Virus record (IMG/VR): IMGVR_UViG_3300044680_000280
Location: 310,001-374,000 of that record
Length of the DNA stretch: 64,000 nt
Strand: one strand, 5' to 3'
Shown piece by piece: positions 3,255 through 42,179 of the stretch; within the stretch, counting starts at the first letter, position 1; the number at the start of each line of letters is the position of its first letter. The position numbers and the translations under genes are program-made. The notes beneath the pieces were generated by a model that had not been told where the DNA came from, ran no database searches, and saw only the letters and a program-made list of their open reading frames with translations.

Positions 3255-3470
3255 AGAAGGAGGGCACGCCAGTTCTGGTGTCACCGTTGGGAACCCCCCT
3301 CGGCAGCCCTGCAAAAGCTTCAGCCGAGGGGGGCTTCGGTCTTTCTCGGGGCGACTGCATTTGAATCTCAATCACCCCTCAGTGGGGACAGGAAGACAAA
3401 CCCGTCGTTTCAATCCTATGTACGGACGGGCGAAGATAAAGACGTCGAGCACCCTGTTGGGGCACTAACC
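3255..3470 (+). ncRNA. candidate structured leader/ncRNA
   Basis: TGGTGTAA at 3243 is not followed by an ATG. 11-bp stem CCCCCCTCGGC 3294-3304/3323-3333, further stems, and a copy of the 21-bp element. Confidence 0.35.
3369..3389 (+). repeat. dispersed 21-bp element copy 1 (CAATCACCCCTCAGTGGGGAC)
   Basis: One mismatch to the copies at 22985, 25968 and 42027. Confidence 0.85.
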
Positions 3471-3493
3471 ATGTGGGAGGTGGGGTACAAACA

Positions 3494-3736
3494 ATGGCAA
3501 AGACTGCTAAGCAGAAGGAATGGACGCCGAAGCGGCTGCGTAAGGCGGTCACGGCGGGATCGAATGCCGAAAAGGTCGAGCTACTTCAGGAGATCGGGGT
3601 TTTGAAGAGTGACGGCACGCTGACCGAACGCACCGAGGACTGGGGCAATAAGCCAACGCGGACCCCGGAGATTGCGCTGGAGAATAAGAGGGACCCGATG
3701 GTTGAAAGGCCGGCACGACGGAGATCGTGTCGTTGA
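3494..3736 (+). CDS. hypothetical basic protein
   Basis: ORF with upstream GGAGG. Confidence 0.6.
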   Translation: MAKTAKQKEWTPKRLRKAVTAGSNAEKVELLQEIGVLKSDGTLTERTEDWGNKPTRTPEIALENKRDPMVERPARRRSCR

Positions 3737-3978
3737 AACCGATCAAAATCGGAGAGTACCCCATCAAGGGTCGTGCCGCCGATGTGCTGAAAGAGGCAAT
3801 TCGAGAAGCCAACGGCGTGCTTGCGGGCGGGGGTCTGTACCCTGAGACGCTGACCGTGCTTTCCCGTGCTGTGATCGCCATGGCGCCCGTCGTCGAGGCG
3901 GCGATTCAATACTCTGCCGGTAATGTGCCCCTACTGGAATTGGACGACGCTGTTCTCAAATTTGGGGAGTCGGCCTAG
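3727..3978 (+). CDS. hypothetical protein
   Basis: Overlapping-operon ORF. Confidence 0.6.
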   Translation: MSLKPIKIGEYPIKGRAADVLKEAIREANGVLAGGGLYPETLTVLSRAVIAMAPVVEAAIQYSAGNVPLLELDDAVLKFGESA

Positions 3979-4012
3979 GACGTGGTGTAAGGTCGTCGCA
4001 GAGGTACCAACC

Positions 4013-4441
4013 ATGATCAAGCAACTTTTCACCACCATTACATTCGCCGCTCCCCTAATGGTGGGCACGGTGCTCTTCGCGGCATGTGCCACCCCACCCA
4101 AGACCTCAGTGACCCCGCCGGCTCCCCCCGTTGTGGTTGCGACGGTCGCGCCCGCTCCTCCGAAGAATTGGTGTCAGGAGGCATGTGACCACATTGCCCA
4201 CACTTTTTCGTGCTCCGAGGGGAACGAAGCCGCGTGTGTTTCGGCCTACGAGACCATCGAAAAGGCGCCCATTCAAGGCATCGGGGGTCCGGGCTTCTGC
4301 CGGCAGATTGCCGAGGCGGCGAACGTCTCTTCGGTGTGTGACATCGGCATCAAGTGTACGGAACCGAATCCTGCGGGGCTCCTGATGCAGCCCCAGCGGT
4401 GCACGTGGGTCGACGTTTGCGGCAACAGGTGTGTCGACTGA
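4013..4441 (+). CDS. Cys-rich lipoprotein
   Basis: Signal peptide with lipobox LFAAC, Pro-rich linker, paired Cys. Confidence 0.7.
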   Translation: MIKQLFTTITFAAPLMVGTVLFAACATPPKTSVTPPAPPVVVATVAPAPPKNWCQEACDHIAHTFSCSEGNEAACVSAYETIEKAPIQGIGGPGFCRQIAEAANVSSVCDIGIKCTEPNPAGLLMQPQRCTWVDVCGNRCVD

Positions 4442-4770
4442 TGTCGGTTCCGGAGTCTCTACGAGTTGTCCTTTTCGTCGAGGGCGATTACTGGATCGCC
4501 CAAGGACTCGAGGTTGACCAGAACGCCCATGCGAGGACGCCCGCAGGGGCGCTTGCGAATCTGAGGGTGATTCTACGTCTACGAGCGGGATTCGATGAGA
4601 AAGCGGGTCGTCCGTTCCTGTCGCGATCTCGCCGGGCGGACGATGAAATGTTTACCCTTTTCGAGGAAGGGCTCCGCTGGGCGTGTCCCCCGAAGTCCAT
4701 GATGGAAGGGACACCGCCGTTCTCTGAGGTCCGTATGGTGCACAGAGCAGATGGAGTGCTCATCGGATGA
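4441..4770 (+). CDS. HicB-like antitoxin-fold protein
   Basis: DYWIAQGLEVDQNAHARTPAGALANL resembles the HicB N-terminal pattern. Confidence 0.5.
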   Translation: MSVPESLRVVLFVEGDYWIAQGLEVDQNAHARTPAGALANLRVILRLRAGFDEKAGRPFLSRSRRADDEMFTLFEEGLRWACPPKSMMEGTPPFSEVRMVHRADGVLIG

Positions 4771-4997
4771 TGACAAGTAAAGAGCAATGGGGAGTGTGGA
4801 TGCGGCCACTGTATCCCAATGTGGCCGAAGCTCAATGGTACCCGCCGCACTCACCGGACAAAGTTGTGGGGTCCTTGTTATTGGCCACTAGCGAGGCCGA
4901 CAGGCTGACCCGCGACGAATCAGTCGGTGGAGGCACTTGGCCTTGTTGGGCCTTTGAGGCGAAACCCTACGACCCGAGAGTTGGCGCGTCATTTTAA
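4767..4997 (+). CDS. hypothetical protein
   Basis: ATGA overlap with the previous gene. Confidence 0.55.
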   Translation: MMTSKEQWGVWMRPLYPNVAEAQWYPPHSPDKVVGSLLLATSEADRLTRDESVGGGTWPCWAFEAKPYDPRVGASF

Positions 4998-5010
4998 AGG
5001 AGCAACCGGA

Positions 5011-5178
5011 ATGAGCAACGATTTTGATGTAGAACTTTGGGCAACCTACCTTCGCATCGCCCTGGACAGCACGGCCGGTTCGAGCGACTCCCCATCGAAC
5101 ATCGTGGATAAGGCGAACGAGATCGCCAAGATAGCCGAGAGACTCGAACGAGAGACACGGCTAGCGTCGCGGGGCTAG
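5011..5178 (+). CDS. hypothetical protein
   Basis: AAGGAG upstream of ATG 5011. Confidence 0.6.
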   Translation: MSNDFDVELWATYLRIALDSTAGSSDSPSNIVDKANEIAKIAERLERETRLASRG

Positions 5179-5245
5179 AGTTCCCATACCCGAGGGCCGA
5201 ACTTTTCGGACGGTCGCGCTATCCCGTCGGTGTAATGATAGAGGT

Positions 5246-6182: not shown

Positions 6183-6691
6183 TGCCCGATTGGCTCAGTC
6201 ACTTGCTCATCTTTTTCAATGAAACGGGGGTTACCGAAGGCAAGCAGATCCTCTCCCTCTCTGAGCAGTGGCAACCCTTCACGGAAGAACAGTGGGTGAG
6301 ACTGGACTACCGAGTTCGGTCGGTCTGCGTCCGGGAGGCGATGTCGTTCTTCAATATGAGGCTTTTCAAGAGGCTCGGGGTATGTAAGCAGATTATCGAT
6401 CTGTGTGACCGTGCAGGTCGTGGTGAGATAGTCGCCCTTGTTGAGTGGAGCGAAGCTCGCGCCCTGGCGTCAGGTAAGGGTCTGCCAGTCGAGATCGTGA
6501 GAGCAACGCGAGAGCCGTCGTTGGTTGGGTCCTGGGTGGTTCGTGAGTTGGCGTCGTTGGTGTCTAGGAAACGAGGGGCACTGACGTGCGTTGCTCAAGC
6601 CACGTACAAGCTCATCGAGGAAGAGATCCGAGTAACGAGAGCCGCTCGTCTAACCGTCTGGTCGCATCTGATGGACGAGGACTCGGTGTAA
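6179..6691 (+). CDS. hypothetical protein with W-tag (paralog of 52628-53119)
   Basis: C-terminus RLTVWSHLMDEDSV*; shares EQWVRLDYRVRSVC with the paralog. Confidence 0.75.
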   Translation: MMPDWLSHLLIFFNETGVTEGKQILSLSEQWQPFTEEQWVRLDYRVRSVCVREAMSFFNMRLFKRLGVCKQIIDLCDRAGRGEIVALVEWSEARALASGKGLPVEIVRATREPSLVGSWVVRELASLVSRKRGALTCVAQATYKLIEEEIRVTRAARLTVWSHLMDEDSV

Positions 6692-6700
6692 GGATAGGCT

Positions 6701-7528: not shown

Positions 7529-7557
7529 GTCCACTTCGGTCTCAATTCGCAAAAGCA

Positions 7558-13645: not shown

Positions 13646-14569
13646 ATGCCGTTGGACGATGATGAGGTGCGGGTCCTAAATCTACGAATCCTGAATCTTG
13701 AGAACCATCTCGCGACGGTCAACGCGGTTCTTTCTCGTATGGCATTGCTTGAGACACCCTCGGTTGAGCCCCCAACCCCACCAGAGACCCCACCAGAGGT
13801 TGAATTCGATGAAACGGACCTCGCACGTATTTGGGTGGAGTGGGGTGAAGTTGAGGGCCGCATTGTTAACGACGGGCACCACCCCATTACTGAGCACTAT
13901 CCCGACAGTGCGTCCGGGTTCGAGTTGTACAGGGAAGAGTGGCTCGAACTACGAATGGGGTCTGAGGAATCGACATGGAACTCAGCTCAACAGAGCGCGG
14001 CTAGAGTTGTCAGGGCTATGCCGAATCCTTATGTGTTACAAGAGAGGGCTCAGGATGCATGGCATTCCATGTCCAGGTACATACAAGAAACGGGGCATCA
14101 TCCGTTTCTGTACGAGGGGAGAGAGTACGCTGATTCGGCGGCGGGGTTCGAGTTGTTCATTGACTATTGGGTAGAGAGATACGTGGGCTTGTGGGGTCGT
14201 GGGTCCTCAAGGTATGAGCTCCAAACCCGCATTGTGAATCGTATTGTCACCGCAACGCCGAACCCCTATTTGCTAAGGGCGCAGGGCCCGGGTCTTCGGG
14301 ATGAATTTCCAATACAGGCCATCGCATTGACCTCAGACTTCGAGGACGTGCCTCCAAACGTCGTCAAGGCCGAGTCAATACTATTGACTCCTGAGGAAGT
14401 GGCTAGACTCACAGGTTACCTCAAACCCTACGAAATGTCGGTCGGTCAGTTGGCCACCAACCTTTTGCGAGAATGGCTCACCACCCATCGAGAGTATGAA
14501 ATTGCAGCGGTGGATCAATCACCCAAGACCATTTGGGACCACATTATGGACGTCCCCACTGAGGGGTGA
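13646..14569 (+). CDS. repeat-domain protein (2 copies of HP..YPD..GFE..W..PNPY) with W-tag
   Basis: A-motif at 13628; C-terminus KTIWDHIMDVPTEG*. Confidence 0.8.
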   Translation: MPLDDDEVRVLNLRILNLENHLATVNAVLSRMALLETPSVEPPTPPETPPEVEFDETDLARIWVEWGEVEGRIVNDGHHPITEHYPDSASGFELYREEWLELRMGSEESTWNSAQQSAARVVRAMPNPYVLQERAQDAWHSMSRYIQETGHHPFLYEGREYADSAAGFELFIDYWVERYVGLWGRGSSRYELQTRIVNRIVTATPNPYLLRAQGPGLRDEFPIQAIALTSDFEDVPPNVVKAESILLTPEEVARLTGYLKPYEMSVGQLATNLLREWLTTHREYEIAAVDQSPKTIWDHIMDVPTEG

Positions 14570-14898
14570 CTGGGATGGCAAAAGCACGAGGCATGATTGT
14601 CTACCGGGGATCGAGCACCAACCTGCTCGATACGGACAGATTCTACGCAAATTCAGACCCCACAATGGGGTACCGAATTGTGAACCCAGGTTACACACGG
14701 AACGGGGAGACGATAGAGGTCGAAGCTGAACAGGACGGGGAACACGGGAATCGCCCTTCAGGTGAGACCCTCACCTTTCTCTTCATTTCTACCCATTCCG
14801 TTGTGAACATCGTCGGTGGTGCCGATCTGATTCCTATTCCCATCGAACTTAACGGACCTCGGAAGACAATATGGGAACATTTGGTGGGTGAAGGGTGA
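14566..14898 (+). CDS. hypothetical protein with W-tag
   Basis: C-terminus RKTIWEHLVGEG*. Confidence 0.75.
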   Translation: MTGMAKARGMIVYRGSSTNLLDTDRFYANSDPTMGYRIVNPGYTRNGETIEVEAEQDGEHGNRPSGETLTFLFISTHSVVNIVGGADLIPIPIELNGPRKTIWEHLVGEG

Positions 14899-14919: not shown

Positions 14920-15255
14920 ATGCCTCCCTCTGAGAACCACTCAGAATGTGATGCTCGCATCGAGGCACTCCACTCAGAATGTGATGCTCGCATCGTGACA
15001 CTCCAGTTGGAAGTGCGGCGGCTCGATACACGGCTTATTTGGCTCAATACACGGCTCGTAACTCTAGAGGCAACGGTTGAGGAACGGAATGATGAACCGG
15101 AGACGACCTTAGCTTCCGAGGACGGATCACCCCCGTTCCGTGTGCCCAGTCTCTGGTCCTCGGATATCGTGGTATCCCATATATTCGAAGAACATAAGGA
15201 CGACGGTTCACCTAGGGTCTCAGCTTGGGATCACATAATGAGTGAGGACGCTTGA
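14920..15255 (+). CDS. coiled-coil protein with W-tag
   Basis: TGGTGTA at 14903; C-terminus RVSAWDHIMSEDA*. Confidence 0.75.
   Translation: MPPSENHSECDARIEALHSECDARIVTLQLEVRRLDTRLIWLNTRLVTLEATVEERNDEPETTLASEDGSPPFRVPSLWSSDIVVSHIFEEHKDDGSPRVSAWDHIMSEDA
14937..14995 (+). repeat. 26-bp direct repeat, period 33 (HSECDARI x2)
   Basis: ccactcagaatgtgatgctcgcatcg at 14937 and 14970. Confidence 0.9.
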
Positions 15256-21078: not shown

Positions 21079-21379
21079 GGTGATCCCAGACAGTAAGGCG
21101 AGCCCTCGGGGTGAACGCGACTTGGATGTCTTGATCTGGAGGTAACAAGGGCAGTTTCCCTTCTACCCGCAGGCGCTCCCCGGTCTCTGCGAATAGTTTG
21201 CGCCCTTCTTTGACATGAGAGTTGAGGGGGTCGTGGCCGAGAATTGTATGTGGTAAGTACTGACAATACTTACTGAAACAATCATCGCAGGCGAAAAGTT
21301 GCTTCTTATCCACCGAGATCCCACAGCACGGGCACACCGTCAACGGCCCTTCGGGTTCATAGGCGGGTTGCAATATCAT
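21062..21379 (-). CDS. Zn-finger protein with W-tag
   Basis: CPCCG...CDDC; RLTVWDHLTNED*; A-motif at 21390. Confidence 0.8.
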   Translation of the reverse strand: MILQPAYEPEGPLTVCPCCGISVDKKQLFACDDCFSKYCQYLPHTILGHDPLNSHVKEGRKLFAETGERLRVEGKLPLLPPDQDIQVAFTPRARLTVWDHLTNED

Positions 21380-21430
21380 GCGGGTTCTTTACACCGTAAC
21401 TTTACGGTGTACCGGTGTAGAGAAGTAATC

Positions 21431-21715
21431 ATGAAAATCACCGACAGACAACAGCAACTCATGGGGGCATATACCCTGGCGTTCGGCACCCCCGCCTTTC
21501 TGCTTCTACTCAACGGTTGGGAGTGGAGTCTCATGACCGACGCCGAGCGCGTCACGTCGCTTCTGGCAACGGTCCTCTTTTCAATCGGCCTTGCCTGCGT
21601 GGTTCATGTGCCGTTTTGTAACGATGTCGTCGTGGCAAAATGTGCACGTGAGGGGTGTCGCCGTCCATGCTCCGACATGAGTTATCTCTGTGAAGTAGAT
21701 CACATGTCCCCGTAG
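21431..21715 (+). CDS. two-TM membrane protein with Cys tail
   Basis: A-motif at 21413. Confidence 0.7.
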   Translation: MKITDRQQQLMGAYTLAFGTPAFLLLLNGWEWSLMTDAERVTSLLATVLFSIGLACVVHVPFCNDVVVAKCAREGCRRPCSDMSYLCEVDHMSP

Positions 21716-21770
21716 GGATGACCATGGACCGTATGGTCATCCGCTCGAATCGAGCGATCTAGCAAACTCC

Positions 21771-22163
21771 TCAGGTTGCAGGGGTAACAGCCTCTCGTAG
21801 CAGTCGTATGTCCTCTGGCACTGGAATTTTCCCGGGATGTGCGTATTCGCACCTACAGCAGTCGATCCAATCTCCCCCAACACACAAGGGGGACTTGAGT
21901 TGACGCTTGTCGAAGTCCGCCGTGTAGACGCAATACTCGGGCGTGTGGTGGGACAATGGGACCCCACATTTAGGGCACTCTCGTGAGATGCCCATCATCT
22001 CAAATACGGTGTCGGGGTTGTGGTCGACATGAAGCTCAACTCCCCCAGACGGGGGGTAGTATAGGCGAATATTTTTGAACGACTTCCCCCATTTGAGCGT
22101 GAGATGTTCGACAAGCAGGTCGGTAATTTCAGTGGACGTCCAACTGTATTTCTCGGTGGGCAT
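21771..22163 (-). CDS. hypothetical Cys-rich protein
   Basis: ORF; CPKCG. Confidence 0.55.
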   Translation of the reverse strand: MPTEKYSWTSTEITDLLVEHLTLKWGKSFKNIRLYYPPSGGVELHVDHNPDTVFEMMGISRECPKCGVPLSHHTPEYCVYTADFDKRQLKSPLCVGGDWIDCCRCEYAHPGKIPVPEDIRLLREAVTPAT

Positions 22164-22169
22164 CTGCGA

Positions 22170-22307
22170 TCATCTCCCGATGTAACGTGAATCGTTCCAC
22201 CCGTGGCAGTCCGGGGTGCATTCAATGTACATACTGAATCCGAAAAGGGCGACCAAAACCACAATGGCCCCCAAGGTGAGCACGGTGATGAGGGCGGCGG
22301 TTTTCAT
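22170..22307 (-). CDS. small membrane protein (45 aa)
   Basis: MKTAALITVLTLGAIVVLVALFGF...; below the track cut-off. Confidence 0.5.
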   Translation of the reverse strand: MKTAALITVLTLGAIVVLVALFGFSMYIECTPDCHGWNDSRYIGR

Positions 22308-22310
22308 TCC

Positions 22311-22691
22311 TCACACCCTTGCGATCCAGCGTTCGGGGTCGTCCAACTCTCGAAATCGGCCTTGTCTGATCCAGGTGAGGGCTTTCGGACCATCATAGAC
22401 CACCTCCACCATGGGGATGCCGTGCCTCCCGTGCATGGCAGTCGCGAACTTATCTCGACCCGTGTATGTTGAGAGCGCGGCGGCTACCCTCTCGTCCTTG
22501 TCGTCCTTGTCAGCTTCGGCGAACCTTTTGTGAAAGACCGCTTCGTCCAGAGCTTGGAACTCCTCCGGAAAACTGCGGATGAGAAGGCGTTGGAGTTTGA
22601 GCCGACGGATCCGCCTCTTGTAGTACTCTTCCTGGGTCTCGTTTCCGCGGGGGTCGGGGTCCGTTGTGAGAAATTCGTAAAGGACGCTCAT
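22311..22691 (-). CDS. hypothetical protein
   Basis: ATGA overlap. Confidence 0.65.
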   Translation of the reverse strand: MSVLYEFLTTDPDPRGNETQEEYYKRRIRRLKLQRLLIRSFPEEFQALDEAVFHKRFAEADKDDKDERVAAALSTYTGRDKFATAMHGRHGIPMVEVVYDGPKALTWIRQGRFRELDDPERWIARV

Positions 22692-22903
22692 CGCCTTGCC
22701 CATTCGGGTAGCCTTTTATTGAGCTGATAAAGAACATTCTTGATGTTCTTTTCAACAGCGAGAGCGGTACGTTCTGGTAGCTCCTCGTGAGTCAGTGGAT
22801 GGTGGTATATGTAATCGGCTCCGTTGCTAAGGTCGCTCTGCACACCATCGATGATGGCCAGGTACGCCATTTGCTTCGGAGTGAGCTTCTTTTCTTTTGT
22901 CAC
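22688..22903 (-). CDS. hypothetical protein
   Basis: GTGA overlap, GAGGAGG SD. Confidence 0.65.
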   Translation of the reverse strand: MTKEKKLTPKQMAYLAIIDGVQSDLSNGADYIYHHPLTHEELPERTALAVEKNIKNVLYQLNKRLPEWARR

Positions 22904-23298
22904 AGGTCCGCCTCCTCTTCTGTGAGGTCGAGGGACTCGAGCTGAAGGAGTACGTCGTTTTTGAGTTTCCCGTCGGTCGGACTCGTCCCCATTGAGGGGT
23001 GATTGAGATTCCTACTCAAACGTTCCAAGAAGTTGAGTCGCTCGAGTTGTAGCTTGAGCTTGAGGATTTTGATCGTGCGGTACGGGCGCGAACGTGGCTT
23101 GGCACTGTAGTTCCAAAGTTTGTTGCAGCGGCACATCTTGTCGGCAATCTGGATCGCCTCCTCGTAGGGCCACTCTTTTTTGGGGTACTCCTCATACCAT
23201 TGCGGGTTTCCGTCGTGCCCGACCGGCTCGCACCATACGCCGTACAGCCCGGAGGGCGCGGCGTACACTTCGTTGGGGAGAGTCTCTAGAGAGTCCAT
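22900..23298 (-). CDS. hypothetical protein
   Basis: A-motif at 23309 places the start at 23298. Confidence 0.7.
   Translation of the reverse strand: MDSLETLPNEVYAAPSGLYGVWCEPVGHDGNPQWYEEYPKKEWPYEEAIQIADKMCRCNKLWNYSAKPRSRPYRTIKILKLKLQLERLNFLERLSRNLNHPSMGTSPTDGKLKNDVLLQLESLDLTEEEADL
22985..23005 (-). repeat. dispersed 21-bp element copy 2
   Basis: Reverse complement CAATCACCCCTCAATGGGGAC, extends with GAGTCC. Confidence 0.85.
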
Positions 23299-23367
23299 GT
23301 GGGATGAATACACCGGCCCTGCTTCTCGGGCTTGAACTTTGTACGACCTTGCGGTGTAATCTGAGCC

Positions 23368-23673
23368 ATGGCAGGCACCAAGTCGAAAATGCTGCGGTTA
23401 CGCGCGGAAGCGATCAAGGACAGTTTGAACTTAGGCCTTGCTCAGTACGAGAGCTTTCTGAAGGAGAACTCTCGGATCCTGGCTTCACTGAAATGGCGAC
23501 GCCAAAACCCCGAGCTCGCTGAAAAGTACGAGAAAATCGCGGGAAACACATTTGATGCGCACAAAATGTGGCTTGCGGAGGTGAAGGTGGACCTCGCGCC
23601 GCTCGTTGCTCGTACCAAACAGAGACTTCAACTCGTGGACGAAATCCTCCAACGTTCCATATCCTCGTCGTGA
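23368..23673 (+). CDS. hypothetical helical protein
   Basis: B-promoter at 23332 and A-motif at 23352. Confidence 0.75.
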   Translation: MAGTKSKMLRLRAEAIKDSLNLGLAQYESFLKENSRILASLKWRRQNPELAEKYEKIAGNTFDAHKMWLAEVKVDLAPLVARTKQRLQLVDEILQRSISSS

Positions 23674-24239
23674 ACCTTCCCGATTGCGTAACCGTCCTCC
23701 CCGATTTTCTGACGGGTTCGGAAGCCGCGTCACTCTTCGATGCCCTCATGCAGGAGGTTGCGTGGCGGCAGACGCATGTTCGGATGTACGGGAAGAGCAT
23801 CCCCGTGCCCCGCCTCATTGCCTGGTACGGAGATCCCGGAGCCAATTACACGTACTCTGGAATCGAGAACGTCTCTCAAATGTGAACGCCCGCCCTCGTC
23901 GGAATCAAACCGAAGGTCGATGCCCTGCTCCCCCGAGGACTCAAATTCAACGGTGTCCTCTTGAATTACTACCGGGACGGAAAGGACAGGATCGGCTACC
24001 ATTCGGACGATGAGAAGGAACTCGGAGAGACTCCGTTCATCGCCTCCCTCTCCATCGGCGCCACCCGGCGGTTCCACCTCAAACACAAGGAAACGAAGGA
24101 CCGCGTCGAGATCCCTCTGACAAGCGGTACCCTCGTCATCATGCATGGGCTATGCCAGAAACTATGGCAACATGCGGTGCCGTCCGAATCTCGACCGACC
24201 GGTCCTCGAATCAATCTGACGTACCGACAGGTCGTTTAG
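23670..24239 (+). pseudogene. alkB: AlkB-family 2OG-Fe(II) dioxygenase (ALKBH2/3-like) with in-frame TGA at 23883-23885
   Basis: PRLIAWYGD..YTYSG, LNYYRDGKDRIGYHSDDE, IASLSIGATRRF, WQHAVP and RINLTYR are all in one frame. The TGA falls at the usual W of the WTP motif. Confidence 0.85.
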
Positions 24240-24583
24240 CGGGCCGGCGGGGGAGCCGGGGTGATGTTGACCGTGAAAACGGGCGGAGGCGGCGGAACGG
24301 TTGGAATTAGGCTCGGATTCTTGCTTTGTAGGCTCTTGATCGCAACGTCGTGCCATGCGTCGATGAAAGAGTCGGCGTCGAGGGCCATTGCGATAACCGT
24401 TATCGCCGCAAGAACACAGATGACGACACGGACGATTCGTTGAGTCGTTTGGTATTCGTTGCTGGCGGCCTTCGTTTGGCGGGTCTTCTCTCGCTCGCGA
24501 CGCGTAGCTTCCCTTTCGGTGATCTGGGCCTTTAGGACCTCGGCTCGTTTTTCAGCATTGAGGAGGTAGGTGAATAGGGTCAT
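24236..24583 (-). CDS. membrane protein with coiled coil
   Basis: A-motif at 24597; one TM segment. Confidence 0.7.
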   Translation of the reverse strand: MTLFTYLLNAEKRAEVLKAQITEREATRREREKTRQTKAASNEYQTTQRIVRVVICVLAAITVIAMALDADSFIDAWHDVAIKSLQSKNPSLIPTVPPPPPVFTVNITPAPPPAR

Positions 24584-24595
24584 GGTGAATACTTA

Positions 24596-24871
24596 TTACA
24601 CCGAGGGATCCATGAGATGGTCCCAAACCGTCTTCACTGGAATCTCTTCTTTCGGGGCCGCGGGCGGGTCATTTCCGTAAATGATTGACTCGCTGAGCAC
24701 GGGATGCCCCTCGCAGCATCTTTCATCCCACACGAAATGCGGATTTGCTGCGTGACGGCGAGTTGCTTTGGCGGCTCGTTCTGCGTCGGAAGGGGAATCA
24801 TGGTCGCTGCATCGAAGGCACCAACACTTTCCGCACCCCGCACACACCACTTCTATGCAATGGTTACCCAC
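24596..24871 (-). CDS. Cys-rich protein with W-tag
   Basis: CAGCG.CWC..C; KTVWDHLMDPSV*. Confidence 0.7.
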   Translation of the reverse strand: MGNHCIEVVCAGCGKCWCLRCSDHDSPSDAERAAKATRRHAANPHFVWDERCCEGHPVLSESIIYGNDPPAAPKEEIPVKTVWDHLMDPSV

Positions 24872-24941
24872 AGTGGACTCCCCATATAGCGATCACAGAG
24901 GCGATCGACCACAAGAGAACCGCTACAATGTCGTCTTCCAT
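24864..24941 (-). CDS. 25-aa hydrophobic peptide
   Basis: A-motif at 24951; MEDDIVAVLLWSIASVIAIWGVHCG. Confidence 0.55.
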   Translation of the reverse strand: MEDDIVAVLLWSIASVIAIWGVHCG

Positions 24942-24985
24942 GAAATATCTTACACCGATCGCCCGGGCGGTGTAAGAAAGATGGC

Positions 24986-25399
24986 ATGGACCTCAGAACC
25001 ACCGCCCTCATCGAGGACTTCGCCAAAGCTATCCTTGAGCTACGGTCCGCTCTCCAGAAGCTCATTGGGTGGACCATGGGGGGCACTTGCTCGGACTGTG
25101 ACAAGTTTCGAGAGGGGGCGCCGCGCGATTGGCTCCATCACGTCGAATGTGATCACCTGAAGGCGATCAACGAGGCCTATGTCCTCCTCGGACTACCTCC
25201 CGAAAAAGGACACACGTACAAAGACCCCAAGGGAGAGATGAAGCGTCTCGCAGACGAACGTCTGGCGGCCTGGTCGGTTAAGTACCGTGAAGCCGCCGAG
25301 GAGCTACGGCATTGCCGTTCGCTTCGGGACGGGGCGAGCGCCGTGACCTGCCCCGAGCCTCCGGAGACCAAAACCACGGAAAGCCCAGAGGGAACATGA
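24986..25399 (+). CDS. hypothetical protein
   Basis: A-motif at 24968. Confidence 0.7.
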   Translation: MDLRTTALIEDFAKAILELRSALQKLIGWTMGGTCSDCDKFREGAPRDWLHHVECDHLKAINEAYVLLGLPPEKGHTYKDPKGEMKRLADERLAAWSVKYREAAEELRHCRSLRDGASAVTCPEPPETKTTESPEGT

Positions 25400-25611
25400 A
25401 AAAGACGATCAATGCGAGCGCCAAGCCGTCTAAAAGCTCTACCCGAGCCAAAGAGAAGCGTAAAATCAAAGAGATAATTGATTGCGAGGGCTTCCACTAC
25501 GGCCTCGTCTCCTACAGCGACTTCGAAGACGTCAAGGATGAGCGTTTCCACGAGCTCCTCAAAGCGTATCGTTTGGCCGCGGGGGCAATCGAAGAGTACC
25601 TCAATCTTTGA
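25396..25611 (+). CDS. hypothetical protein
   Basis: ATGA overlap, GAGGG SD. Confidence 0.65.
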   Translation: MKKTINASAKPSKSSTRAKEKRKIKEIIDCEGFHYGLVSYSDFEDVKDERFHELLKAYRLAAGAIEEYLNL

Positions 25612-25891
25612 GCAGATGGTCCCATATGGTCATGGTCGGCTTCTCGCGAACCTCCTCTTTGAGGGTTTTTCTGACCACACGGATGATCTTTGCTCGGTTT
25701 ATGCTTACACGGCCGTGATGGGAATCTTCCCAGGCCTTCAATAATTCACGAGCACGGGCTCGGGTCATGACTTCTGGCCTTTGGTGCGTGTCATACACGC
25801 CCTGCACGTTTAACCCGACCCTCGGGTTAAACGTGACGTACCATTTGTGCCTCTGCGTCCTAACCAGGTACCCTAGGACCTCCTTATTCAT
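25601..25891 (-). CDS. hypothetical protein with W-tag
   Basis: MTIWDHLLKD*. Confidence 0.7.
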   Translation of the reverse strand: MNKEVLGYLVRTQRHKWYVTFNPRVGLNVQGVYDTHQRPEVMTRARARELLKAWEDSHHGRVSINRAKIIRVVRKTLKEEVREKPTMTIWDHLLKD

Positions 25892-25958
25892 CGTGTGCGA
25901 TCCTCTCCCACACGCTCAACTTGGCGCTGAGCCATCGGGCGATGAAATTGGGAATCAT
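25884..25958 (-). CDS. 24-aa peptide consisting mostly of a W-tag variant
   Basis: MIPNFIARWLSAKLSVWERIAHDE*; starts 9 nt after the 21-bp element. Confidence 0.45.
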   Translation of the reverse strand: MIPNFIARWLSAKLSVWERIAHDE

Positions 25959-25967
25959 GACGTTGGG

Positions 25968-25988
25968 GTCCCCATTGAGGGGTGATTG
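25968..25988 (-). repeat. dispersed 21-bp element copy 3
   Basis: Reverse complement CAATCACCCCTCAATGGGGAC. Confidence 0.85.
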
Positions 25989-26190
25989 GGAAACCCTTAG
26001 GGTTTCAAAGACCACATACACCGACGCCAAAGGGGAACGACAATGAGAAAGGCTTGACACCGCCCGGGGACTCGTTAAACTCCGCTCGAAAGACGAGGCC
26101 CCATGAAGTTCGTTTTTGCCGCCGTGTTTTGCGCCATTTCCGTCACCGGGATTGCCGCCGTTTGCGGTTTCTTCTCTCCCTGAACTTCCC

Positions 26191-26394
26191 ATGAAGACCA
26201 AACTGACATCTCTCGACGTTGCCCGCCGTATCGCTAACGGTAAGTGCCCGCTCGATATTTTGGATCACGTTCTCGTGGGAGAACTGACCAGGAGAGCCGT
26301 CGAGGACGGGTTCATCCGTCATAACTACGGTTGCAACGACGACTGGGGCGGGTACTCGGTGACCGACAAGGGGCGCAAGGCACTGGAAGGCTAA
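26191..26394 (+). CDS. small winged-helix-like protein
   Basis: YSVTDKGRKAL wing motif. Confidence 0.55.
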   Translation: MKTKLTSLDVARRIANGKCPLDILDHVLVGELTRRAVEDGFIRHNYGCNDDWGGYSVTDKGRKALEG

Positions 26395-26651
26395 CCTACC
26401 GGCTCCGGAATGGTATACTGGTCCGTGACCAGGTCTCGCGAGGAAACCTACAGGCTTGCTCTGACCGTGCTCGAGGTAGCCCGTAAGAACGGGGACATCG
26501 TGAGTGCGGCTATCGCCTCCGCGGTCATCGCTGCCATTCACCGGTGCGAAAGGAACTGACCATGCCTGATTTCATCGTCGAAATGAGAATTCTCTGTGAG
26601 ACCCTCAAGCGAATCGAACGGCTGTCAACTCGTCGGTGTAATGGGGCTCTC

Positions 26652-27179
26652 ATGGAAGATGAAGTCACCAAATTGCGCCAGCAGGTCGAACAACTGCTAG
26701 GGGACATCCACGCGGTTTCCGAGGACTATGCGGACGCCAAGAAGCGTGCCGAAGAGGCAGAGGGTAAGCTCGACCGTATCCTCAAGCTGCCCCGGAAGTC
26801 CTACGGAGGTGATGTCAATGCTGACGGTTGGAACAACGCCCTCGATGAGATTCAGATCATCGTCGGGGCTCGGCGGGCCGTTTCACCAGAGGAGCGCGTC
26901 GAGACCGCTCCGTATCATTACACGTTCTACGTGCGTCCCCACAGAAACAGCAAACAAGAACCGTGCCCTATCAACAAACTTCACGTGGCGGTTGAAGCGG
27001 ACGGGACGGCCTGTCCGCCTCCGACGGCCTGTCCGGACTGTAAAACGGACCTGCTTTTTCGCCTCGCCACTAGGGGCCCAGCCAACGTGTTCGAGATCCT
27101 CGACAGAGACGAAGGTGTCGTATACGATGAGGACATCAAGAATCTGTGGGGCTCTCTCCTGGAGTCGGAAACGGTGTAA
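26652..27179 (+). CDS. coiled-coil protein with W-tag variant
   Basis: A-motif at 26634; KNLWGSLLESETV*. Confidence 0.7.
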   Translation: MEDEVTKLRQQVEQLLGDIHAVSEDYADAKKRAEEAEGKLDRILKLPRKSYGGDVNADGWNNALDEIQIIVGARRAVSPEERVETAPYHYTFYVRPHRNSKQEPCPINKLHVAVEADGTACPPPTACPDCKTDLLFRLATRGPANVFEILDRDEGVVYDEDIKNLWGSLLESETV

Positions 27180-34736: not shown

Positions 34737-35080
34737 TTGAGAGAGCTGTGGAACGAGTGCGTGTAGGGGCGGCCATTGGGACAGCGTACCTGTCCACCGG
34801 GGTTGCGTATCTGTCGTCCGGTCTGGCCAAGCTGGGGGTCGTTTCCCACGGGTACGCTTGCGGTAGGCACATGGACGCTATCGATGCCCACGAGCTGTGC
34901 CACGACTGGAATGGGACCACGCGGCACATCGAACAGATGGCGCTGGAAGTCGAGCTTCAGAAGGCATGGGAACTCACCGAGGAGCTCCGCCTTCGGGAAC
35001 GACGGTTCGGCCCCCTACCTGCTGACGAAGTCAACCAGATGAAGGCTGAGTCCACCGTGCGGCTTTCGGGGTCCAAGTGA
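34733..35080 (+). CDS. hypothetical protein
   Basis: GTGA overlap, GGAGG SD. Confidence 0.6.
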   Translation: MIERAVERVRVGAAIGTAYLSTGVAYLSSGLAKLGVVSHGYACGRHMDAIDAHELCHDWNGTTRHIEQMALEVELQKAWELTEELRLRERRFGPLPADEVNQMKAESTVRLSGSK

Positions 35081-39239: not shown

Positions 39240-39261
39240 GCACCTATACGTACACCGATCC

Positions 39262-40346: not shown

Positions 40347-40520
40347 CGTCAGATTTACCTACACCGGATCTGGACTTACGGCCCGACGGGGGTTTCATCT
40401 TCCACTTGTCGATCGCGTTAGGGTATGATCCCCCTCGTGGCTCGCGTTGTGAGACGTGGTCGGAACTTTTAGGAACTGTTTTAAGTTGAACCCTAGGGGA
40501 GACCGCGCTGTACTCCCCCC

Positions 40521-40880
40521 ATGGAAGACCGGCTCATTCTAATCTCAGCCTTTTGGCGGAACGATTGCCCCGACGGAGTCGGCTGCACGTTCGAGTTCCA
40601 AGGGAACGATGGGGAAACGATGGCGAAGTTGATCGAGGATACCGTCAAGGTGTACGATCAGCACCCTGAGGTTCCCGTCGAGGAGTACGTTGAACAGTTG
40701 CGAGCGATTGGGCTGACCCCGATAGATCTCCGAGACGAGCAGATGCTGATGCTCGCGATGATCAACATCGCCTGGCTCGAGCGTCGCGGCCACATTCCGA
40801 CGGATGAGTTCAACGGAATGCTCTACGTGCGGTTGATCAAAGGTGAACCCACTCCGTCGAAGGTGCCCTTCACCAACTGA
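40521..40880 (+). CDS. hypothetical protein
   Basis: B-promoter at 40486. Confidence 0.75.
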   Translation: MEDRLILISAFWRNDCPDGVGCTFEFQGNDGETMAKLIEDTVKVYDQHPEVPVEEYVEQLRAIGLTPIDLRDEQMLMLAMINIAWLERRGHIPTDEFNGMLYVRLIKGEPTPSKVPFTN

Positions 40881-40883
40881 GTC

Positions 40884-41558
40884 TCAGAGGTGGTGGAAGT
40901 CGATTTCGATGTGGCTGATTTCGTTGCGATCGATTCGGCGAGGTAGGTAGTCCAGTGGGTACTTGCCGTTTGTTTTGTAAACTTGCCGCCGATGGTCGGC
41001 TCTTTCAATGTTGATGATCGCATCGGTGACCCGCGTCCAACCACCACGAAACACACGGACAGCATCCAAGGACAGTGGGTTGGCGGTGTAGAAGGGCGGT
41101 ATCTGTGGGTGAATGCTCGAGCCGTCGTGGAAGTACATCACTGGGGGTGTGGAGAAAAGCAACCCCTCTTTCTCTCCCCAGAGCTTCCCATCTTGCGTGA
41201 AGACTCGCAGCTCCATTGATGTGTCGATCCTCGGGACGTCCGTAATGGAAAGAACCGCCTCTTTGAAGGTTCTTACGATGCGGGACCCTCTTCTGGCGGC
41301 GCACTGCTCCTCGTACATCTGACGTATGCGGCCCGGTTCTAAATTGCTGAATGGATCGTTCTCTCGTCGCGGCCACAGGCGATTGAGCTCGTTGAGGTCG
41401 ACGGGTAGGGAAATCCGACTGAACCTCGTTCCAGGGAGTTTATCCTCGGGAGTTCTCTCGACAGCCTCTTTGGTCGCTGCGTTGGCACGGGAACCCGCAA
41501 AGAGAGCGGTGGGAATGGCGGCAAGGCCGGATAGAAGGGATCTTCTGGTGGTGTGCAT
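40884..41558 (-). CDS. putative Tat-exported protein
   Basis: MHTTRRSLLSGLAA...ANA signal; TGGTGTA at 41569. Confidence 0.7.
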   Translation of the reverse strand: MHTTRRSLLSGLAAIPTALFAGSRANAATKEAVERTPEDKLPGTRFSRISLPVDLNELNRLWPRRENDPFSNLEPGRIRQMYEEQCAARRGSRIVRTFKEAVLSITDVPRIDTSMELRVFTQDGKLWGEKEGLLFSTPPVMYFHDGSSIHPQIPPFYTANPLSLDAVRVFRGGWTRVTDAIINIERADHRRQVYKTNGKYPLDYLPRRIDRNEISHIEIDFHHL

Positions 41559-41633
41559 GGAGAAAGGTTACACCAACGCCTGGGCGTTTTGGGATTCTTC
41601 GGCAATTTCTCCCAACGGTGTAATCTTTCTCCC

Positions 41634-41981
41634 ATGAGCACCCAATTGCAAATGAATGCTCGGTATGCCGAGACCCGCATCGAAAACGCGAAGGGTCAGA
41701 CCATGGACGAGGTGGTCGAGGAGATGCGACAGAAGCACTGGGTGCCACTTCGCCGGGCTCTACTGCTGGAAGGTGTGACCCTAAGTCGCTACTGCGACTT
41801 TCTCAACGCTTGGCGAAAAGGGATCACGCGTTACATAACCCACGGTTGGCCGGAATTTTGCTACATTCGTCTGCAACCGGGGTCGATTTCGTCGCTGGCG
41901 CACCCGGATCAAGGTCGCGGGCTGACCGAGGTAGGGGTTGTAGACGAGGTTCATGCAGGAAATACAGCGAATGAGCTCTAG
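41634..41981 (+). CDS. hypothetical protein
   Basis: A-motif at 41616. Confidence 0.65.
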   Translation: MSTQLQMNARYAETRIENAKGQTMDEVVEEMRQKHWVPLRRALLLEGVTLSRYCDFLNAWRKGITRYITHGWPEFCYIRLQPGSISSLAHPDQGRGLTEVGVVDEVHAGNTANEL

Positions 41982-42026
41982 AAGTTCAAGAGTTGCGGGA
42001 AGCTAAAGTTTTCCGGAAACCCTACC

Positions 42027-42047
42027 CAATCACCCCTCAATGGGGAC
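42027..42047 (+). repeat. dispersed 21-bp element copy 4
   Basis: CAATCACCCCTCAATGGGGAC(GAGTCC), intergenic. Confidence 0.85.
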
Positions 42048-42179
42048 GAGTCCTGGAAGGCCCCGAGACGGGTCGAGTCGTGACGGGACTCACTCGAGGT
42101 ACGCTGAGAACGGAGCGTTGAATTTTTCACTTGAACCCGGGTCGGGTTGTGGCTTTACTGTCAACACAAGGAGACAACG

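What the first reader, a model, noticed from the sequence alone, without database searches (positions are those of the whole stretch)
3369..42053. Four solitary copies of a 21-27 bp hairpin element resembling a type III CRISPR repeat
CAATCACCCCTCA(A/G)TGGGGAC occurs at 3369(+), 22985(-), 25968(-) and 42027(+). Copies 2 and 4 extend to ...GGGGACGAGTCC, and copies 1 and 2 share upstream GAATCT. It falls in different reading frames or in intergenic DNA, so it is conserved as nucleic acid. It is always co-oriented with local transcription, 10-130 nt before a gene start. The CCCC-N5-GGGG-ACGAG layout matches the 3' hairpin plus handle of type III-A repeats (S. epidermidis ...CACCCCGAAGAAAAGGGGACGAGAAC). 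Inference: solitary repeat units acting as RNA anti-CRISPRs (Racr) or Cas6 processing sites. Alternatives are a nut/boxB-like antitermination site or an operator.
Basis: partly seen in the sequence, partly recalled or inferred. Interest (0 to 1): 0.68.

Follow-up and report, generated by a model that had tools for sequence, protein, structure and literature searches.

The report
Private regulatory motif of a megaphage
A 21-23-base motif with a tiny hairpin is scattered through one ~463-kb peat megaphage; it is a real signal, most likely a control site in the phage's own transcripts, and nothing links it to CRISPR.

Summary
The motif is real and far beyond chance: 5 copies in the window against 0.02 expected. 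The whole ~463-kb genome holds at least 9 family members. Only yCA[AG]TCACCCCTCA[AG]TGGGGAC(g) is conserved, and the flanks are unrelated. The window belongs to a peat megaphage with 38 tRNAs, a tmRNA, sigma-like genes and a NusG-like gene. I found no CRISPR array, Cas6 or phage RNA polymerase.

The exact core occurs only as singletons in 185,579 species genomes, 241 M metagenome records and 2.9 M viral contigs. Five related megaphages lack it. The supposed type III handle (ACGAG) is in 2 copies only. CRISPR arrays caught by a looser pattern (acidobacterial, I-E-like by period and repeat shape) share just two 7-mers with it, on the opposite strand. The Racr/Cas6 reading is therefore unsupported.

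Eight of nine copies point with local genes. The five co-oriented exact-core copies lie downstream of the phage's own YGGTGTA promoters. Four of them lie 76-132 nt before Shine-Dalgarno-led genes.

Best guess (0.35): a sense-strand leader or intercistronic site read by a phage factor, nut- or LoaP-like. Main rival: a stoperator-like DNA operator. No RNA data exist to decide.

The parts
3363..3389 (+). Copy 1: GAATCT + CAATCACCCCTCAGTGGGGAC. It sits in a 284-bp divergent intergenic region, 119 nt downstream of a same-strand GGTGTA and 104 nt before the SD-led ATG at 3494 that opens a ~9-kb run of plus-strand genes.
14552..14572 (-). It is antisense to the local plus-strand genes. Its reverse complement supplies GAGGGG (SD-like) and the TGA stop at the junction of the genes ending at 14569 and starting at 14575.
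14656..14672 (+). Weak relative GACCCCACAATGGGGTA (6-bp stem, CAA loop, no 5' arm), inside a called gene. Membership is doubtful.
22979..23011 (-). Copy 2, the longest shared form (33 nt): GAATCT + core + GAGTCC. It lies in the 3' end of a leaderless-type 132-137-aa ORF, 303 nt downstream of that ORF's GGTGTA and 81 nt before the SD-led GTG start at 22903.
25968..25988 (-). Copy 3. Intergenic (divergent region), 28 nt downstream of GGTGTA with a 7-bp hairpin between them, and 76 nt before the ATG at 25891.
42027..42053 (+). Copy 4: core + GAGTCC. It lies 46 nt after the stop of the upstream gene (41981). It is followed by a weak terminator-like hairpin (42101-42128) and a sigma-70-like TTGAAC-N17-TTTACT, and is 132 nt before the SD-led ATG at 42180.
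3244..3249 (+). Same-strand GGTGTA promoter-like hexamer upstream of copy 1.
26017..26022 (-). Same-strand GGTGTA promoter-like hexamer 28 nt upstream of copy 3.
23309..23314 (-). GGTGTA-N10-ATG promoter and start of the ORF that carries copy 2. It is directly preceded by a GCCCGAGAAGCAGGGC mini-hairpin (23316-23331).
41617..41622 (+). GGTGTA-N10-ATG promoter and start of the gene upstream of copy 4.

Best explanation
The element is a strand-specific cis-acting site private to this ~463-kb peat megaphage. On the sense strand it reads as a pyrimidine-rich arm yCA(A/G)UCA, then a 4-bp CCCC/GGGG hairpin with a UCA(A/G)U loop, then AC(G).

It is carried inside the phage's own transcripts. The five co-oriented exact-core copies lie downstream of a same-strand YGGTGTA promoter. 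Four of them lie 76-132 nt upstream of a Shine-Dalgarno-led cistron: in a leader, between cistrons, or in a 3' UTR ahead of a terminator-like hairpin.

Most likely a phage-encoded factor recognises it on the nascent RNA, or on the transcribed DNA in an orientation-dependent way. That factor would control read-through, processing or stability for the downstream accessory genes, as lambda nut/boxB or the LoaP leader hairpin do.

Shown: the sequence, copy number, sharp boundaries, position, orientation bias, and absence from relatives and from CRISPR arrays. Inferred: that it acts as RNA, which factor reads it, and what the effect is.
For: - Non-random: 5 copies in the window against 0.02 expected. 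It is the most over-represented long k-mer in the genome after the tRNA T-arm.
- Conservation is confined to about 21-23 nt with unrelated flanks. It is therefore a discrete site, not a duplicated segment.
- Orientation: 8 of 9 family members are co-oriented with local genes. For the 7-of-8 count the one-sided binomial is 0.035. The ninth copy, also co-oriented, comes and the gene table.
- Position: 4 of 6 exact-core copies are intergenic where 13% of the genome is. This counts 386911 as intergenic on my revised start; my own caller places it in a CDS (3 of 6). With 4 of 6, p = 0.004.
- Two copies have a same-strand GGTGTA 9 and 28 nt upstream (p = 0.004). The other co-oriented exact-core copies have one 119-404 nt upstream in the same transcription unit.
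- YGGTGTA-N10-ATG precedes 78 genes against about 6 expected. It is also conserved upstream of an orthologous ATPase gene in relatives at variable spacing, usually after a terminator-like hairpin.
- Genes just downstream of four copies use GGAGG-type SD sites and long untranslated stretches, unlike the leaderless-type majority.
- Mismatches in the diverged copies mostly fall outside the stem, and two variants close the loop with an extra A-T pair.
- Copies 34750 and 42027 have a stop codon, the motif, then a terminator-like hairpin, as nutR precedes tR1 in lambda (the lambda layout is from my own knowledge).
- The phage encodes a NusG-family protein (TIGR00922 E 1.2e-6; phrog_6386 'transcription antiterminator' E 4e-6) and sigma-70-like proteins.
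Against: - There are no RNA data. All three runs holding the phage are DNA, so transcription, ends and processing are untested.
- The hairpin is only 4 bp and thermodynamically unremarkable (z about 0).
- There is no true covariation, because the copies are almost identical.
- One near-perfect copy (14552) is antisense, with no same-strand promoter within 4 kb.
- A convincing terminator follows only copy 34750.
- The NusG-like gene is present in 5 of 5 relatives, yet the motif is in none of them. That protein is therefore not specifically tied to the motif.
- The loop is not GNRA-like and there is no boxA consensus.
- Every positional argument fits an orientation-dependent DNA operator equally well.
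Confidence: 0.35

Rival explanations
1. DNA operator of the stoperator type. A phage DNA-binding protein binds the asymmetric 21-nt duplex, which contains a partly symmetric (C/G)(A/T)CCCC-N5-GGGG(A/T)(C/G) core and two yCAAT words 11 bp apart. Binding would block or modulate host RNA polymerase initiation or elongation in an orientation-dependent way.
For: - The element has many dispersed copies of an asymmetric site whose orientation follows transcription. Copies sit in intergenic spaces, at a gene junction (14552) and at gene ends. [quoted passage not shown]
- The yCAAT words recur at one helical turn.
- A DNA site works on either strand, which accommodates the antisense copy.
- Copy 25968 faces a divergent 67-aa gene whose sequence looks to me like a winged helix. 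This is my own reading; no family hit was found.
Against: - No cognate repressor was identified, and the neighbouring proteins hit no PHROG or PADLOC family.
- A 463-kb phage with no integrase or repressor seen so far is not obviously temperate.
- Identity over 21 nt across copies is tighter than usual for operator sets (my own knowledge).
- The copies sit 76-132 nt from starts and mostly downstream of promoters rather than over them.
Confidence: 0.25
2. Selfish or recombination-related short repeat. This would be a REP/MITE-like unit, or a junction sequence of shuffled gene cassettes in the hyperplastic accessory region. It would have spread by transposition or gene conversion and persist where it does no harm.
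For: - Six of nine members lie in the 310-390-kb small-gene region.
- The copies are nearly identical, yet the element is absent from all five relatives, which suggests recent spread.
- The extensions are mosaic: copy 22985 shares its 5' side with 3369 and its 3' side with 42027.
- One copy is inserted in the opposite orientation exactly at a gene junction, and others sit at gene ends.
- An actinobacterial genome carries a similar C4/G4 hairpin plus ACG in inverted pairs 119 bp apart, MITE-like.
- The phage holds other short dispersed hairpin families.
Against: - No transposase or RAYT was identified, there are no target-site duplications or paired inverted copies, and 21 nt is very short for a mobile unit.
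- The orientation and promoter-proximity biases are not expected of a neutral repeat.
- A related word, TCAATCAARATGGGG, sits at the syntenic spot upstream of the ATPase gene in a relative at about 55% protein identity. That argues for an old, selected element.
Confidence: 0.13
3. Promoter for an unrecognised phage RNA polymerase or sigma factor, as with T7-type 23-nt promoters or N4 virion-polymerase hairpin promoters.
For: - The contiguous conserved block is 21-23 nt and almost invariant, co-oriented with SD-led genes 76-132 nt downstream, sometimes within the 3' end of the preceding gene, and private to one phage. This is the pattern of T7-group promoters (my own knowledge).
- The small hairpin, which becomes a 5-bp stem with a CAA loop in variants, recalls N4 early promoters (my own knowledge).
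- Several 1000-2000-aa proteins have no family assignment.
- The phage encodes sigma-70-like proteins.
Against: - No single-subunit or multisubunit polymerase signature motif occurs in any frame of G000 or most of the 56.6-kb remainder. No polymerase family hit was found among the 20 large proteins scanned, nor in the Pfam tables of the window and the remainder.
- A sigma-type promoter would show two boxes about 17 nt apart, not one block, and nothing is conserved downstream of GGGGAC(G).
- The phage already has two clear promoter classes for host-type polymerase.
Confidence: 0.08
4. One reading: solitary CRISPR-repeat mimics (Racr) or Cas6 processing sites that titrate host Cas proteins.
For: - I did not check that repeat here, beyond the 8-nt repeat-derived 5' tag described in PMC5389561.
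- Two copies continue ACGAG.
- Two copies lie just downstream of a promoter-like GGTGTA, as SRUs often do (PMC10651486).
- Read on the opposite strand, the block is GTCCCC-loop-GGGG plus a conserved TGATTGRR. That mimics the hairpin-plus-8-nt-handle layout of the I-E-like repeats found in sampled Acidobacteriota.
Against: - The exact core gives only singleton hits, with no arrays: 20 in 185,579 species genomes, 26 stretches in 241 M metagenome records (one of them a non-CRISPR pair 194 bp apart), and 3 in 2.9 M viral contigs. None carries the CAATCA arm.
- The acidobacterial I-E-like repeats share only TCACCCC and TGGGGAC, have a middle 4 nt longer, and match on the strand antisense to phage genes in 8 of 9 copies.
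- None of their 101 spacers matches the phage.
- The tag positions are not conserved.
- The block covers 21-23 nt, whereas SRUFinder requires at least 90% repeat coverage and at least 41.1 bits.
- Copies lie in ORFs and one is antisense.
- No array or Cas6 match was found in G000, and no array or Cas Pfam hit in the 56.6-kb remainder.
- The host is unknown.
Confidence: 0.05

Closest known systems
Lambda-type nut sites (boxA + boxB), and leader hairpins or ops elements that recruit specialised NusG paralogs (LoaP, RfaH)
   Same: It is a short conserved single-stranded arm followed by a small stem with a 5-nt loop. It is read in the sense of transcription and placed after a promoter or after the first cistron, sometimes just ahead of a terminator-like hairpin. 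There are several copies per genome. The phage encodes a NusG-family protein.
   Different: The stem is 4 bp and the loop UCA(A/G)U is not GNRA-like. There is no boxA consensus and no N-like protein was identified. A terminator follows clearly in only one copy. The NusG-like gene is shared by five relatives that lack the motif. One copy is antisense.
Stoperators and operators of Cluster A mycobacteriophages (L5 repressor sites)
   Same: It is an asymmetric site with many dispersed copies, in intergenic spaces and at gene junctions, with orientation correlated with transcription (PMC9283540).
   Different: It is 21-23 nt rather than 13, with about 9 copies rather than more than 20. It contains an inverted repeat. 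No repressor was identified, no evidence of lysogeny was found, and the host is unknown.
Solitary repeat units / RNA anti-CRISPRs (Racr)
   Same: It is a solitary hairpin-containing unit in a phage. It is mostly intergenic, not next to cas genes, and two copies lie just after a promoter-like element.
   Different: No matching CRISPR repeat was found anywhere searched. The block is shorter than a repeat and the handle is not conserved. There are multiple copies per genome, some in ORFs and one antisense.
T7-group phage promoters
   Same: The length (about 23 nt), the near-identity among copies, co-orientation with SD-led downstream genes, and specificity to one phage.
   Different: No phage RNA polymerase was detected. 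The phage already uses YGGTGTA and TTGAAC-N17-TGTACT-type promoters.
PeSL (promoter-early stem-loop) cassettes of T4-type hyperplastic regions
   Same: Short conserved regulatory sequences with stem-loops punctuate a region of small ORFan genes. The PeSL description itself is from my own knowledge.
   Different: The element is not itself promoter-like, and there are far fewer copies than genes. The GGTGTA promoters and the GCGAAGC mini-hairpins in this phage fit the PeSL picture better than this motif does.

Membership tests
SRU / Racr (PMC10651486) | Matches a known CRISPR repeat over at least 90% of its length (SRUFinder bit score at least 41.1). | tested here: not met
   No repeat database was available. 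As a substitute, the exact 17-nt core gave only singleton hits in genome, metagenome and viral collections. The looser CACCCC-N4-9-GGGGAC pattern found I-E-like arrays in 4 of 401 Acidobacteriota. They share only two 7-mers, with a 4-nt length difference.
SRU / Racr (PMC10651486) | Solitary, intergenic, not associated with cas genes or further repeats. | tested here: inconclusive
   Each copy is solitary. No array or Cas6 match was found in G000, and no array or Cas Pfam hit in the 56.6-kb remainder. However, 3-4 of 9 copies lie in called ORFs and one is antisense.
SRU / Racr (PMC10651486) | [quoted passage not shown] | not testable with these tools
   All three runs that hold the phage are DNA. 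Two copies have GGTGTA 9 and 28 nt upstream.
SRU / Racr (PMC10651486) | The host carries a CRISPR-Cas system of the matching subtype. | not testable with these tools
   The host is unknown. The 101 spacers of the acidobacterial I-E-like arrays gave no match to the phage.
   After GGGG the copies read ACAGGAAG, ACGTCCAT, ACGAGTCC, ACCCCAAC, ACGAGTCC and ACGTCAAG. Only AC(G) is shared.
Lambda-type nut site | Lies in the transcribed region after a promoter and ahead of terminators. | tested here: inconclusive
   A same-strand GGTGTA lies upstream of the five co-oriented exact-core copies. A strong terminator-like hairpin follows only copy 34750, and a weak one follows 42027.
Lambda-type nut site | boxA consensus, plus a boxB hairpin with a 5-bp stem and a GNRA-like pentaloop (definition from my own knowledge). 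| tested here: not met
   The arm is yCA(A/G)TCA, the stem is 4 bp and the loop is TCA(A/G)T.
Lambda-type nut site | A cognate N-like arginine-rich antiterminator. | not tested
   Small ORFans near the copies have no family hits. No search for arginine-rich motifs was made.
NusG-paralog recruitment element (ops / LoaP leader) | A specialised NusG paralog is encoded by the same genome. | tested here: met
   A 320-aa NGN-KOW protein lies at about G000:189.5-190.4 kb (-), read as L128:1045-2004. It matches TIGR00922 at E 1.2e-6 (below the curated cut-off), gives weak UpxY, LoaP and RfaH hits, and matches phrog_6386 at 4e-6.
NusG-paralog recruitment element (ops / LoaP leader) | The element and the paralog co-occur across related genomes. 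| tested here: not met
   The paralog is in 5 of 5 relatives at 44-72% identity. The motif is in 0 of 5 with up to 2 mismatches, and the covariance model finds nothing in G001.
Stoperator / operator set | An asymmetric site in many dispersed copies, oriented with transcription. | tested here: met
   There are 9 family members and 8 are co-oriented.
Stoperator / operator set | A cognate repressor and a temperate life style. | tested here: inconclusive
   No repressor or integrase was recognised in the regions read. One Xre-type HTH gene lies in the 56.6-kb part. The IMG/VR 'provirus' label seems to stem from metabolic genes in that part, not from host flanks.
Phage-polymerase promoter (T7 / N4 type) | A phage-encoded single-subunit or virion RNA polymerase. 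| tested here: not met
   No motif A/B/C or DFDGD-type signature occurs in six frames of G000 and most of the 56.6-kb remainder. No polymerase family was found among the 20 large proteins scanned. A very divergent enzyme cannot be excluded.

The most novel reading that the evidence does not exclude
Read on the opposite strand, the block is GTCCCC-ATTGA-GGGG followed by a conserved TGATTGRR. That is a miniature hairpin plus an 8-nt 'handle', laid out like the I-E-like repeats (GTCCCCAC-GCAC-GTGGGG-GTGAACCG) that I found in sampled peat-type Acidobacteriota.

The phage might therefore carry about nine minimal decoys for a Cas6e/Cascade of an unsampled host. Equivalently, its sense transcripts might carry an 'anti-repeat' that pairs with host pre-crRNA repeats. 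Either would be a multi-copy RNA anti-CRISPR of a new design.
Probability: 0.04. Interest if true: 0.8.

Novelty: new member of a known kind. Interest (0 to 1): 0.3.

Why it matters
If the element is a leader or intercistronic control site, it gives a handle on how an uncultivated ~463-kb megaphage schedules expression of its large accessory-gene region. The other parts of that handle are the YGGTGTA leaderless-type promoters, the sigma-like genes and the family-wide NusG paralog noticed here. Gene regulation in such phages is essentially unexplored.

The case is also a caution for scans. A C4/G4 hairpin followed by AC(G) is not enough to call a CRISPR-repeat mimic. In the genomes I sampled, the same shape turned up in I-E-like repeats on the other strand and in a MITE-like element. 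As a stand-alone finding it is a modest, phage-private motif of unproven function.

Tried and rejected
- CRISPR array search. TRF on G000 and on the 56.6-kb remainder found no arrays. The exact core in viral, genome and metagenome collections gave singletons only. Looser patterns in viral contigs also gave singletons.
- Cas6 family search in the phage: no match.
- Expression. No RNA run holds the phage. Read laying on 21201-27000 with three peat DNA runs showed identical sequence and no strain variation, so it gave neither transcript ends nor comparative information.
- Relatives. Five related megaphages lack the motif. Proteins next to copies 25968 and 42027 have no relatives in IMG/VR, so there is no syntenic comparison for the strong copies.
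- Neighbouring proteins. There are no PHROG or PADLOC hits and no similarity among the downstream genes.
- Rfam at gathering thresholds over the window: nothing.
- Generic sigma-70 and terminator scans around the copies were at background level.
- Reverse-strand promoter idea. The TTGAGG / GGGTGATTG word on the reverse strand resembles a -35 box, but no -10-like box lies at a fixed distance, so I rejected it (reading).
- Mini-ORF idea. The loop carries ATG or GTG in 9 of 10 members, but the ORFs from it run 3, 6, 14, 29, 31 and 47 codons (with one long ORF) with nothing in common beyond MGT. Rejected as a coding signal.
- Host link by spacers of acidobacterial I-E-like arrays: only 12-17-nt chance matches.
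- Replication-polarity reading (Ter- or Chi-like): the strand pattern along the genome shows no polar switch.
- Phage polymerase search by signature motifs and PHROGs: negative.
- The first look-up of encoding contigs failed because the called start differs from mine.

Full report
**What the window is.** The window is positions 310001-374000 of a 406,734-bp IMG/VR record. The record carries 38 tRNA genes and a tmRNA gene. It also carries tail sheath, baseplate, tail fibre, DNA polymerase and helicase genes.

Positions 0-250 kb hold large genes, nearly all on one strand. Positions 250-406 kb hold small genes on both strands with no family assignment. The same sequence lies on a 463,523-bp JGI contig and on Logan contigs from peat metagenomes. 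One Logan contig bridges both ends of the record. The genome is therefore about 463 kb, circular or circularly permuted, and the record lacks 56.6 kb. I read that part through six loci. It holds small ORFs plus metabolic-looking genes, which probably explains the 'provirus' label.

**The observation.** All four reported copies are present as described, including the shared extensions. With up to three mismatches the window has five matches against 0.02 expected.

Genome-wide there is another exact core at 386911(-), one-mismatch copies at 34750(-) and 93667(-), and a diverged copy at 287907(+). There is also a 24-bit copy in the 56.6-kb part. Apart from the tRNA T-arm, this is the most over-represented long k-mer in the genome.

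Alignment of the copies with 200-nt flanks shows that only about 21-23 nt are conserved: yCA[AG]TCACCCCTCA[AG]TGGGGAC(g). The hairpin is a 4-bp stem with a 5-nt loop. It is predicted in five of six copies, but the folding energies do not differ from shuffles.

**The CRISPR reading.**
- G000 has no tandem array and no Cas6 match. The 56.6-kb remainder has no array and no Cas Pfam hit.
- The exact 17-nt core, searched on both strands, occurs as 20 singletons in one genome each of 185,579 species. It gives 26 stretches in 241 million metagenome records, one of which is a non-CRISPR pair 194 bp apart, and 3 singletons in IMG/VR. None has the CAATCA arm.
- A deliberately loose pattern (CACCCC-N4-9-GGGGAC) in 401 Acidobacteriota genomes did catch CRISPR arrays in G287, G162, G278 and G058. 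They have a 61-62-bp period and a 29-nt repeat that reads GTCCCCACGCACGTGGGGGTGAACCG on its sense strand. I call them I-E-like from the period and repeat shape; I did not check their cas genes.
- Those repeats share only TCACCCC and TGGGGAC with the phage element, have a middle 4 nt longer, and match on the strand antisense to phage genes. None of their 101 spacers matches the phage.
- A similar pattern in 301 Actinomycetota gave one outlier, G579. Its hits are inverted pairs 119 bp apart, which is MITE-like and not CRISPR.
- Some genomes in those two samples are flagged unpublished (G035, G412, G459, G499, G531). No claim here rests on them.
- The SRU/Racr criteria in PMC10651486 require at least 90% coverage of a known repeat and at least 41.1 bits. 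A 21-23-nt block whose best partner shares two 7-mers is far from that.
- For a type III system the 8-nt repeat-derived tag is the constant part of mature crRNAs (PMC5389561). Here only AC(G) is conserved after the stem, and ACGAG occurs in two copies.

I conclude that the resemblance is a generic property of C4/G4 hairpins.

**Context of the copies.** While looking at relatives I noticed that this phage family uses a short promoter-like signal. YGGTGTA lies exactly 10 nt before ATG at 78 genes in this genome, against about 6 expected, with no -35 box. CGGTGTA is also conserved upstream of an orthologous ATPase gene in relatives, at variable distance from the ATG and usually just after a terminator-like hairpin. 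This argues for a -10-like promoter element giving leaderless or near-leaderless mRNAs.

A second, sigma-70-like class is clear in relative G001 (GGTTGATTC-N12-13-GGGTTGTAGT) and is seen as TTGAAC-N17-TGTACT/TTTACT in this phage.

Against this map, the five co-oriented exact-core copies of the motif lie downstream of a same-strand GGTGTA, at 9, 28, 119, 303 and 404 nt. Two within 40 nt has p = 0.004. The copies are placed as follows:
- Copy 3369 sits in the leader of a roughly 9-kb run of plus-strand genes.
- Copy 22985 sits in the 3' end of a leaderless-type first gene, ahead of SD-led genes.
- Copy 25968 sits in a leader, behind a 7-bp hairpin.
- Copy 42027 lies 46 nt after a stop codon, ahead of a weak terminator-like hairpin.
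- Copy 34750 lies 12 nt after a stop codon, ahead of a strong terminator-like hairpin (-23.5 kcal/mol) and the next GGTGTA promoter.
- The copy in the 56.6-kb part lies between two co-oriented genes, 89 nt before the second.

The genes just downstream of the four reported copies use GGAGG-type ribosome sites after 76-132 untranslated nt. Eight of nine members point with the local genes.

The exception is 14552. Its reverse complement provides an SD-like GAGGGG and the stop codon at a junction of two plus-strand genes.

**Transcription machinery.** No single-subunit or multisubunit RNA polymerase signature was found, and none of the 20 large proteins I scanned hits a polymerase family. The phage does encode sigma-70-like proteins and a 320-aa NusG-family protein. 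The latter matches TIGR00922 at E 1.2e-6, gives weak UpxY, LoaP and RfaH matches, and matches phrog_6386 'transcription antiterminator'. That protein is present in all five relatives examined.

**Relatives.** Five related megaphages (44-72% identity in the NusG-like protein, 53-66% in the ATPase) have no copy with up to two mismatches. A covariance model of the element finds nothing in the closest relative, G001.

G004 has two good and two weak copies of TCAATCAARATGGGG. One lies at the syntenic place upstream of the ATPase gene. This hints that the arm and the (A/G)TGGGG part are older than the present hairpin form, but the evidence is thin.

**What it most likely is.** The sharp boundaries, near-identity, intergenic enrichment, orientation bias and placement inside transcription units mark a functional cis element read in the sense of transcription. 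I favour a site on the nascent transcript that a phage factor recognises to control read-through, processing or stability ahead of SD-led accessory genes, working like nut/boxB or the LoaP leader hairpin. My confidence is 0.35.

It is not a member of those families. The stem, the loop and the arm do not fit boxA/boxB, and the NusG paralog does not co-vary with the motif.

An orientation-dependent DNA operator of the stoperator kind (PMC9283540) explains the same positional facts and accommodates the antisense copy. I give it 0.25. A selfish or recombination-derived repeat gets 0.13, a promoter for an unrecognised polymerase 0.08, and the Racr reading 0.05. No RNA data exist for this phage, so the decisive test is experimental.

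**Verdict.** This is a real element, private to one phage, and probably regulatory. Interest is modest. The promoter architecture and the NusG paralog of this megaphage family, seen in passing, may deserve more attention than the motif itself.

Noticed in passing
Whole genome. In the window, for example 1578-1583(+), 2013-2018(+), 3221-3226(-), 5229-5234(+), 6685-6690(+), 23309-23314(-) and 41617-41622(+).: YGGTGTA lies exactly 10 nt before ATG/GTG at 78 genes against about 6 expected, with no -35 box. This looks like a leaderless-type promoter class. CGGTGTA is also conserved upstream of an orthologous ATPase gene in about ten related megaphages, usually after a terminator-like hairpin. G001 has 31 GGTGTA-N10-ATG sites.
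   Followed up: partly
Relative G001 (L073-L091). In this phage, window 42131-42159(+) and about G000:386803-386831(-).: There is a second, sigma-70-like promoter class. In G001 about 18 copies of GGTTGATTC-N12-13-GGGTTGTAGT lie a few to ~25 nt (mostly 5-10) before start codons, often as divergent pairs. In this phage the form is TTGAAC-N17-TTTACT/TGTACT.
   Followed up: partly
About G000:189.5-190.4 kb (-), read as L128:1045-2004; also G000:187532-188446 (-) and G000:395876-396163 (-).: A 320-aa NusG-family protein (NGN + KOW with a ~140-aa C-terminal extension) is conserved in 5 of 5 related megaphages. Sigma-70-like genes lie beside it, and another lies at about 396 kb.
   Followed up: partly
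G000:297188, 297440, 297818, 298089, 301498, 301717 and 390751; window 23316-23331(-).: There are eight copies of GCCCGCGAAGCAGGGC, a hairpin built around GCGAAGC. Six are clustered at 297-302 kb and three directly abut a CGGTGTA promoter.
   Followed up: no
G000:77859, 143090, 282595, 359706 (window 49706-49722, -) and 406008; window 41658-41674(+) is a variant inside a gene.: There are six copies of GCTCGGTACGCCGAGAC, a 5-bp stem with a UACG tetraloop. Most lie in leaders shortly after a -10-like TGTAC and before a start codon. Like the motif under study, it ends in GAC.
   Followed up: no
G000:164951-246034.: There are 38 tRNA genes, all but one on one strand, within about 28 kb at 218-246 kb. 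A tmRNA gene with tag ANDNGIPDLAIAA lies among them.
   Followed up: no
JGI contig Ga0480565_0000004 positions about 109,012-165,800 (loci L121-L127).: The IMG/VR record omits 56.6 kb that closes the genome to about 463 kb. This part holds PurA, dihydroorotate dehydrogenase, an amidohydrolase, CoaE, peptidase M32, HSP20, AAA, DnaJ, PTH2, a Ser/Thr kinase, a SNF2-like 1247-aa protein, GmrSD_N, NADAR and an Acb1/2H-phosphoesterase-like gene. The 'provirus' call looks like an artefact of these bacterial-like genes.
   Followed up: partly
Relative G004: 53908-53923(-) and 86021-86036(-).: TCAATCAARATGGGG recurs in G004, with two weaker copies. One copy is at the syntenic spot between the terminator-like hairpin and the GGTGTA promoter of the phrog_8638 ATPase gene, where this phage has its imperfect copy 34750. 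It may be an older form of the element.
   Followed up: partly
Window 14937-15005.: A 33-nt tandem repeat of 2.1 copies (CCACTCAGAATGTGATGCTCGCATCGAGACACT) lies about 370 nt from the antisense copy 14552, just after a GGTGTA.
   Followed up: no
G579 (Actinomycetota genome), for example C1:185264-185399.: At least 14 dispersed inverted pairs of ACCCCCGTTTAGGGGACG lie 119 bp apart, which is MITE-like. This shows that the C4/G4-hairpin-plus-ACG shape is not specific to CRISPR.
   Followed up: no
Window about 19822.: The JGI contig and the IMG/VR record fall out of register near this position, probably through a small indel. They are therefore not byte-identical assemblies of the phage.
   Followed up: no
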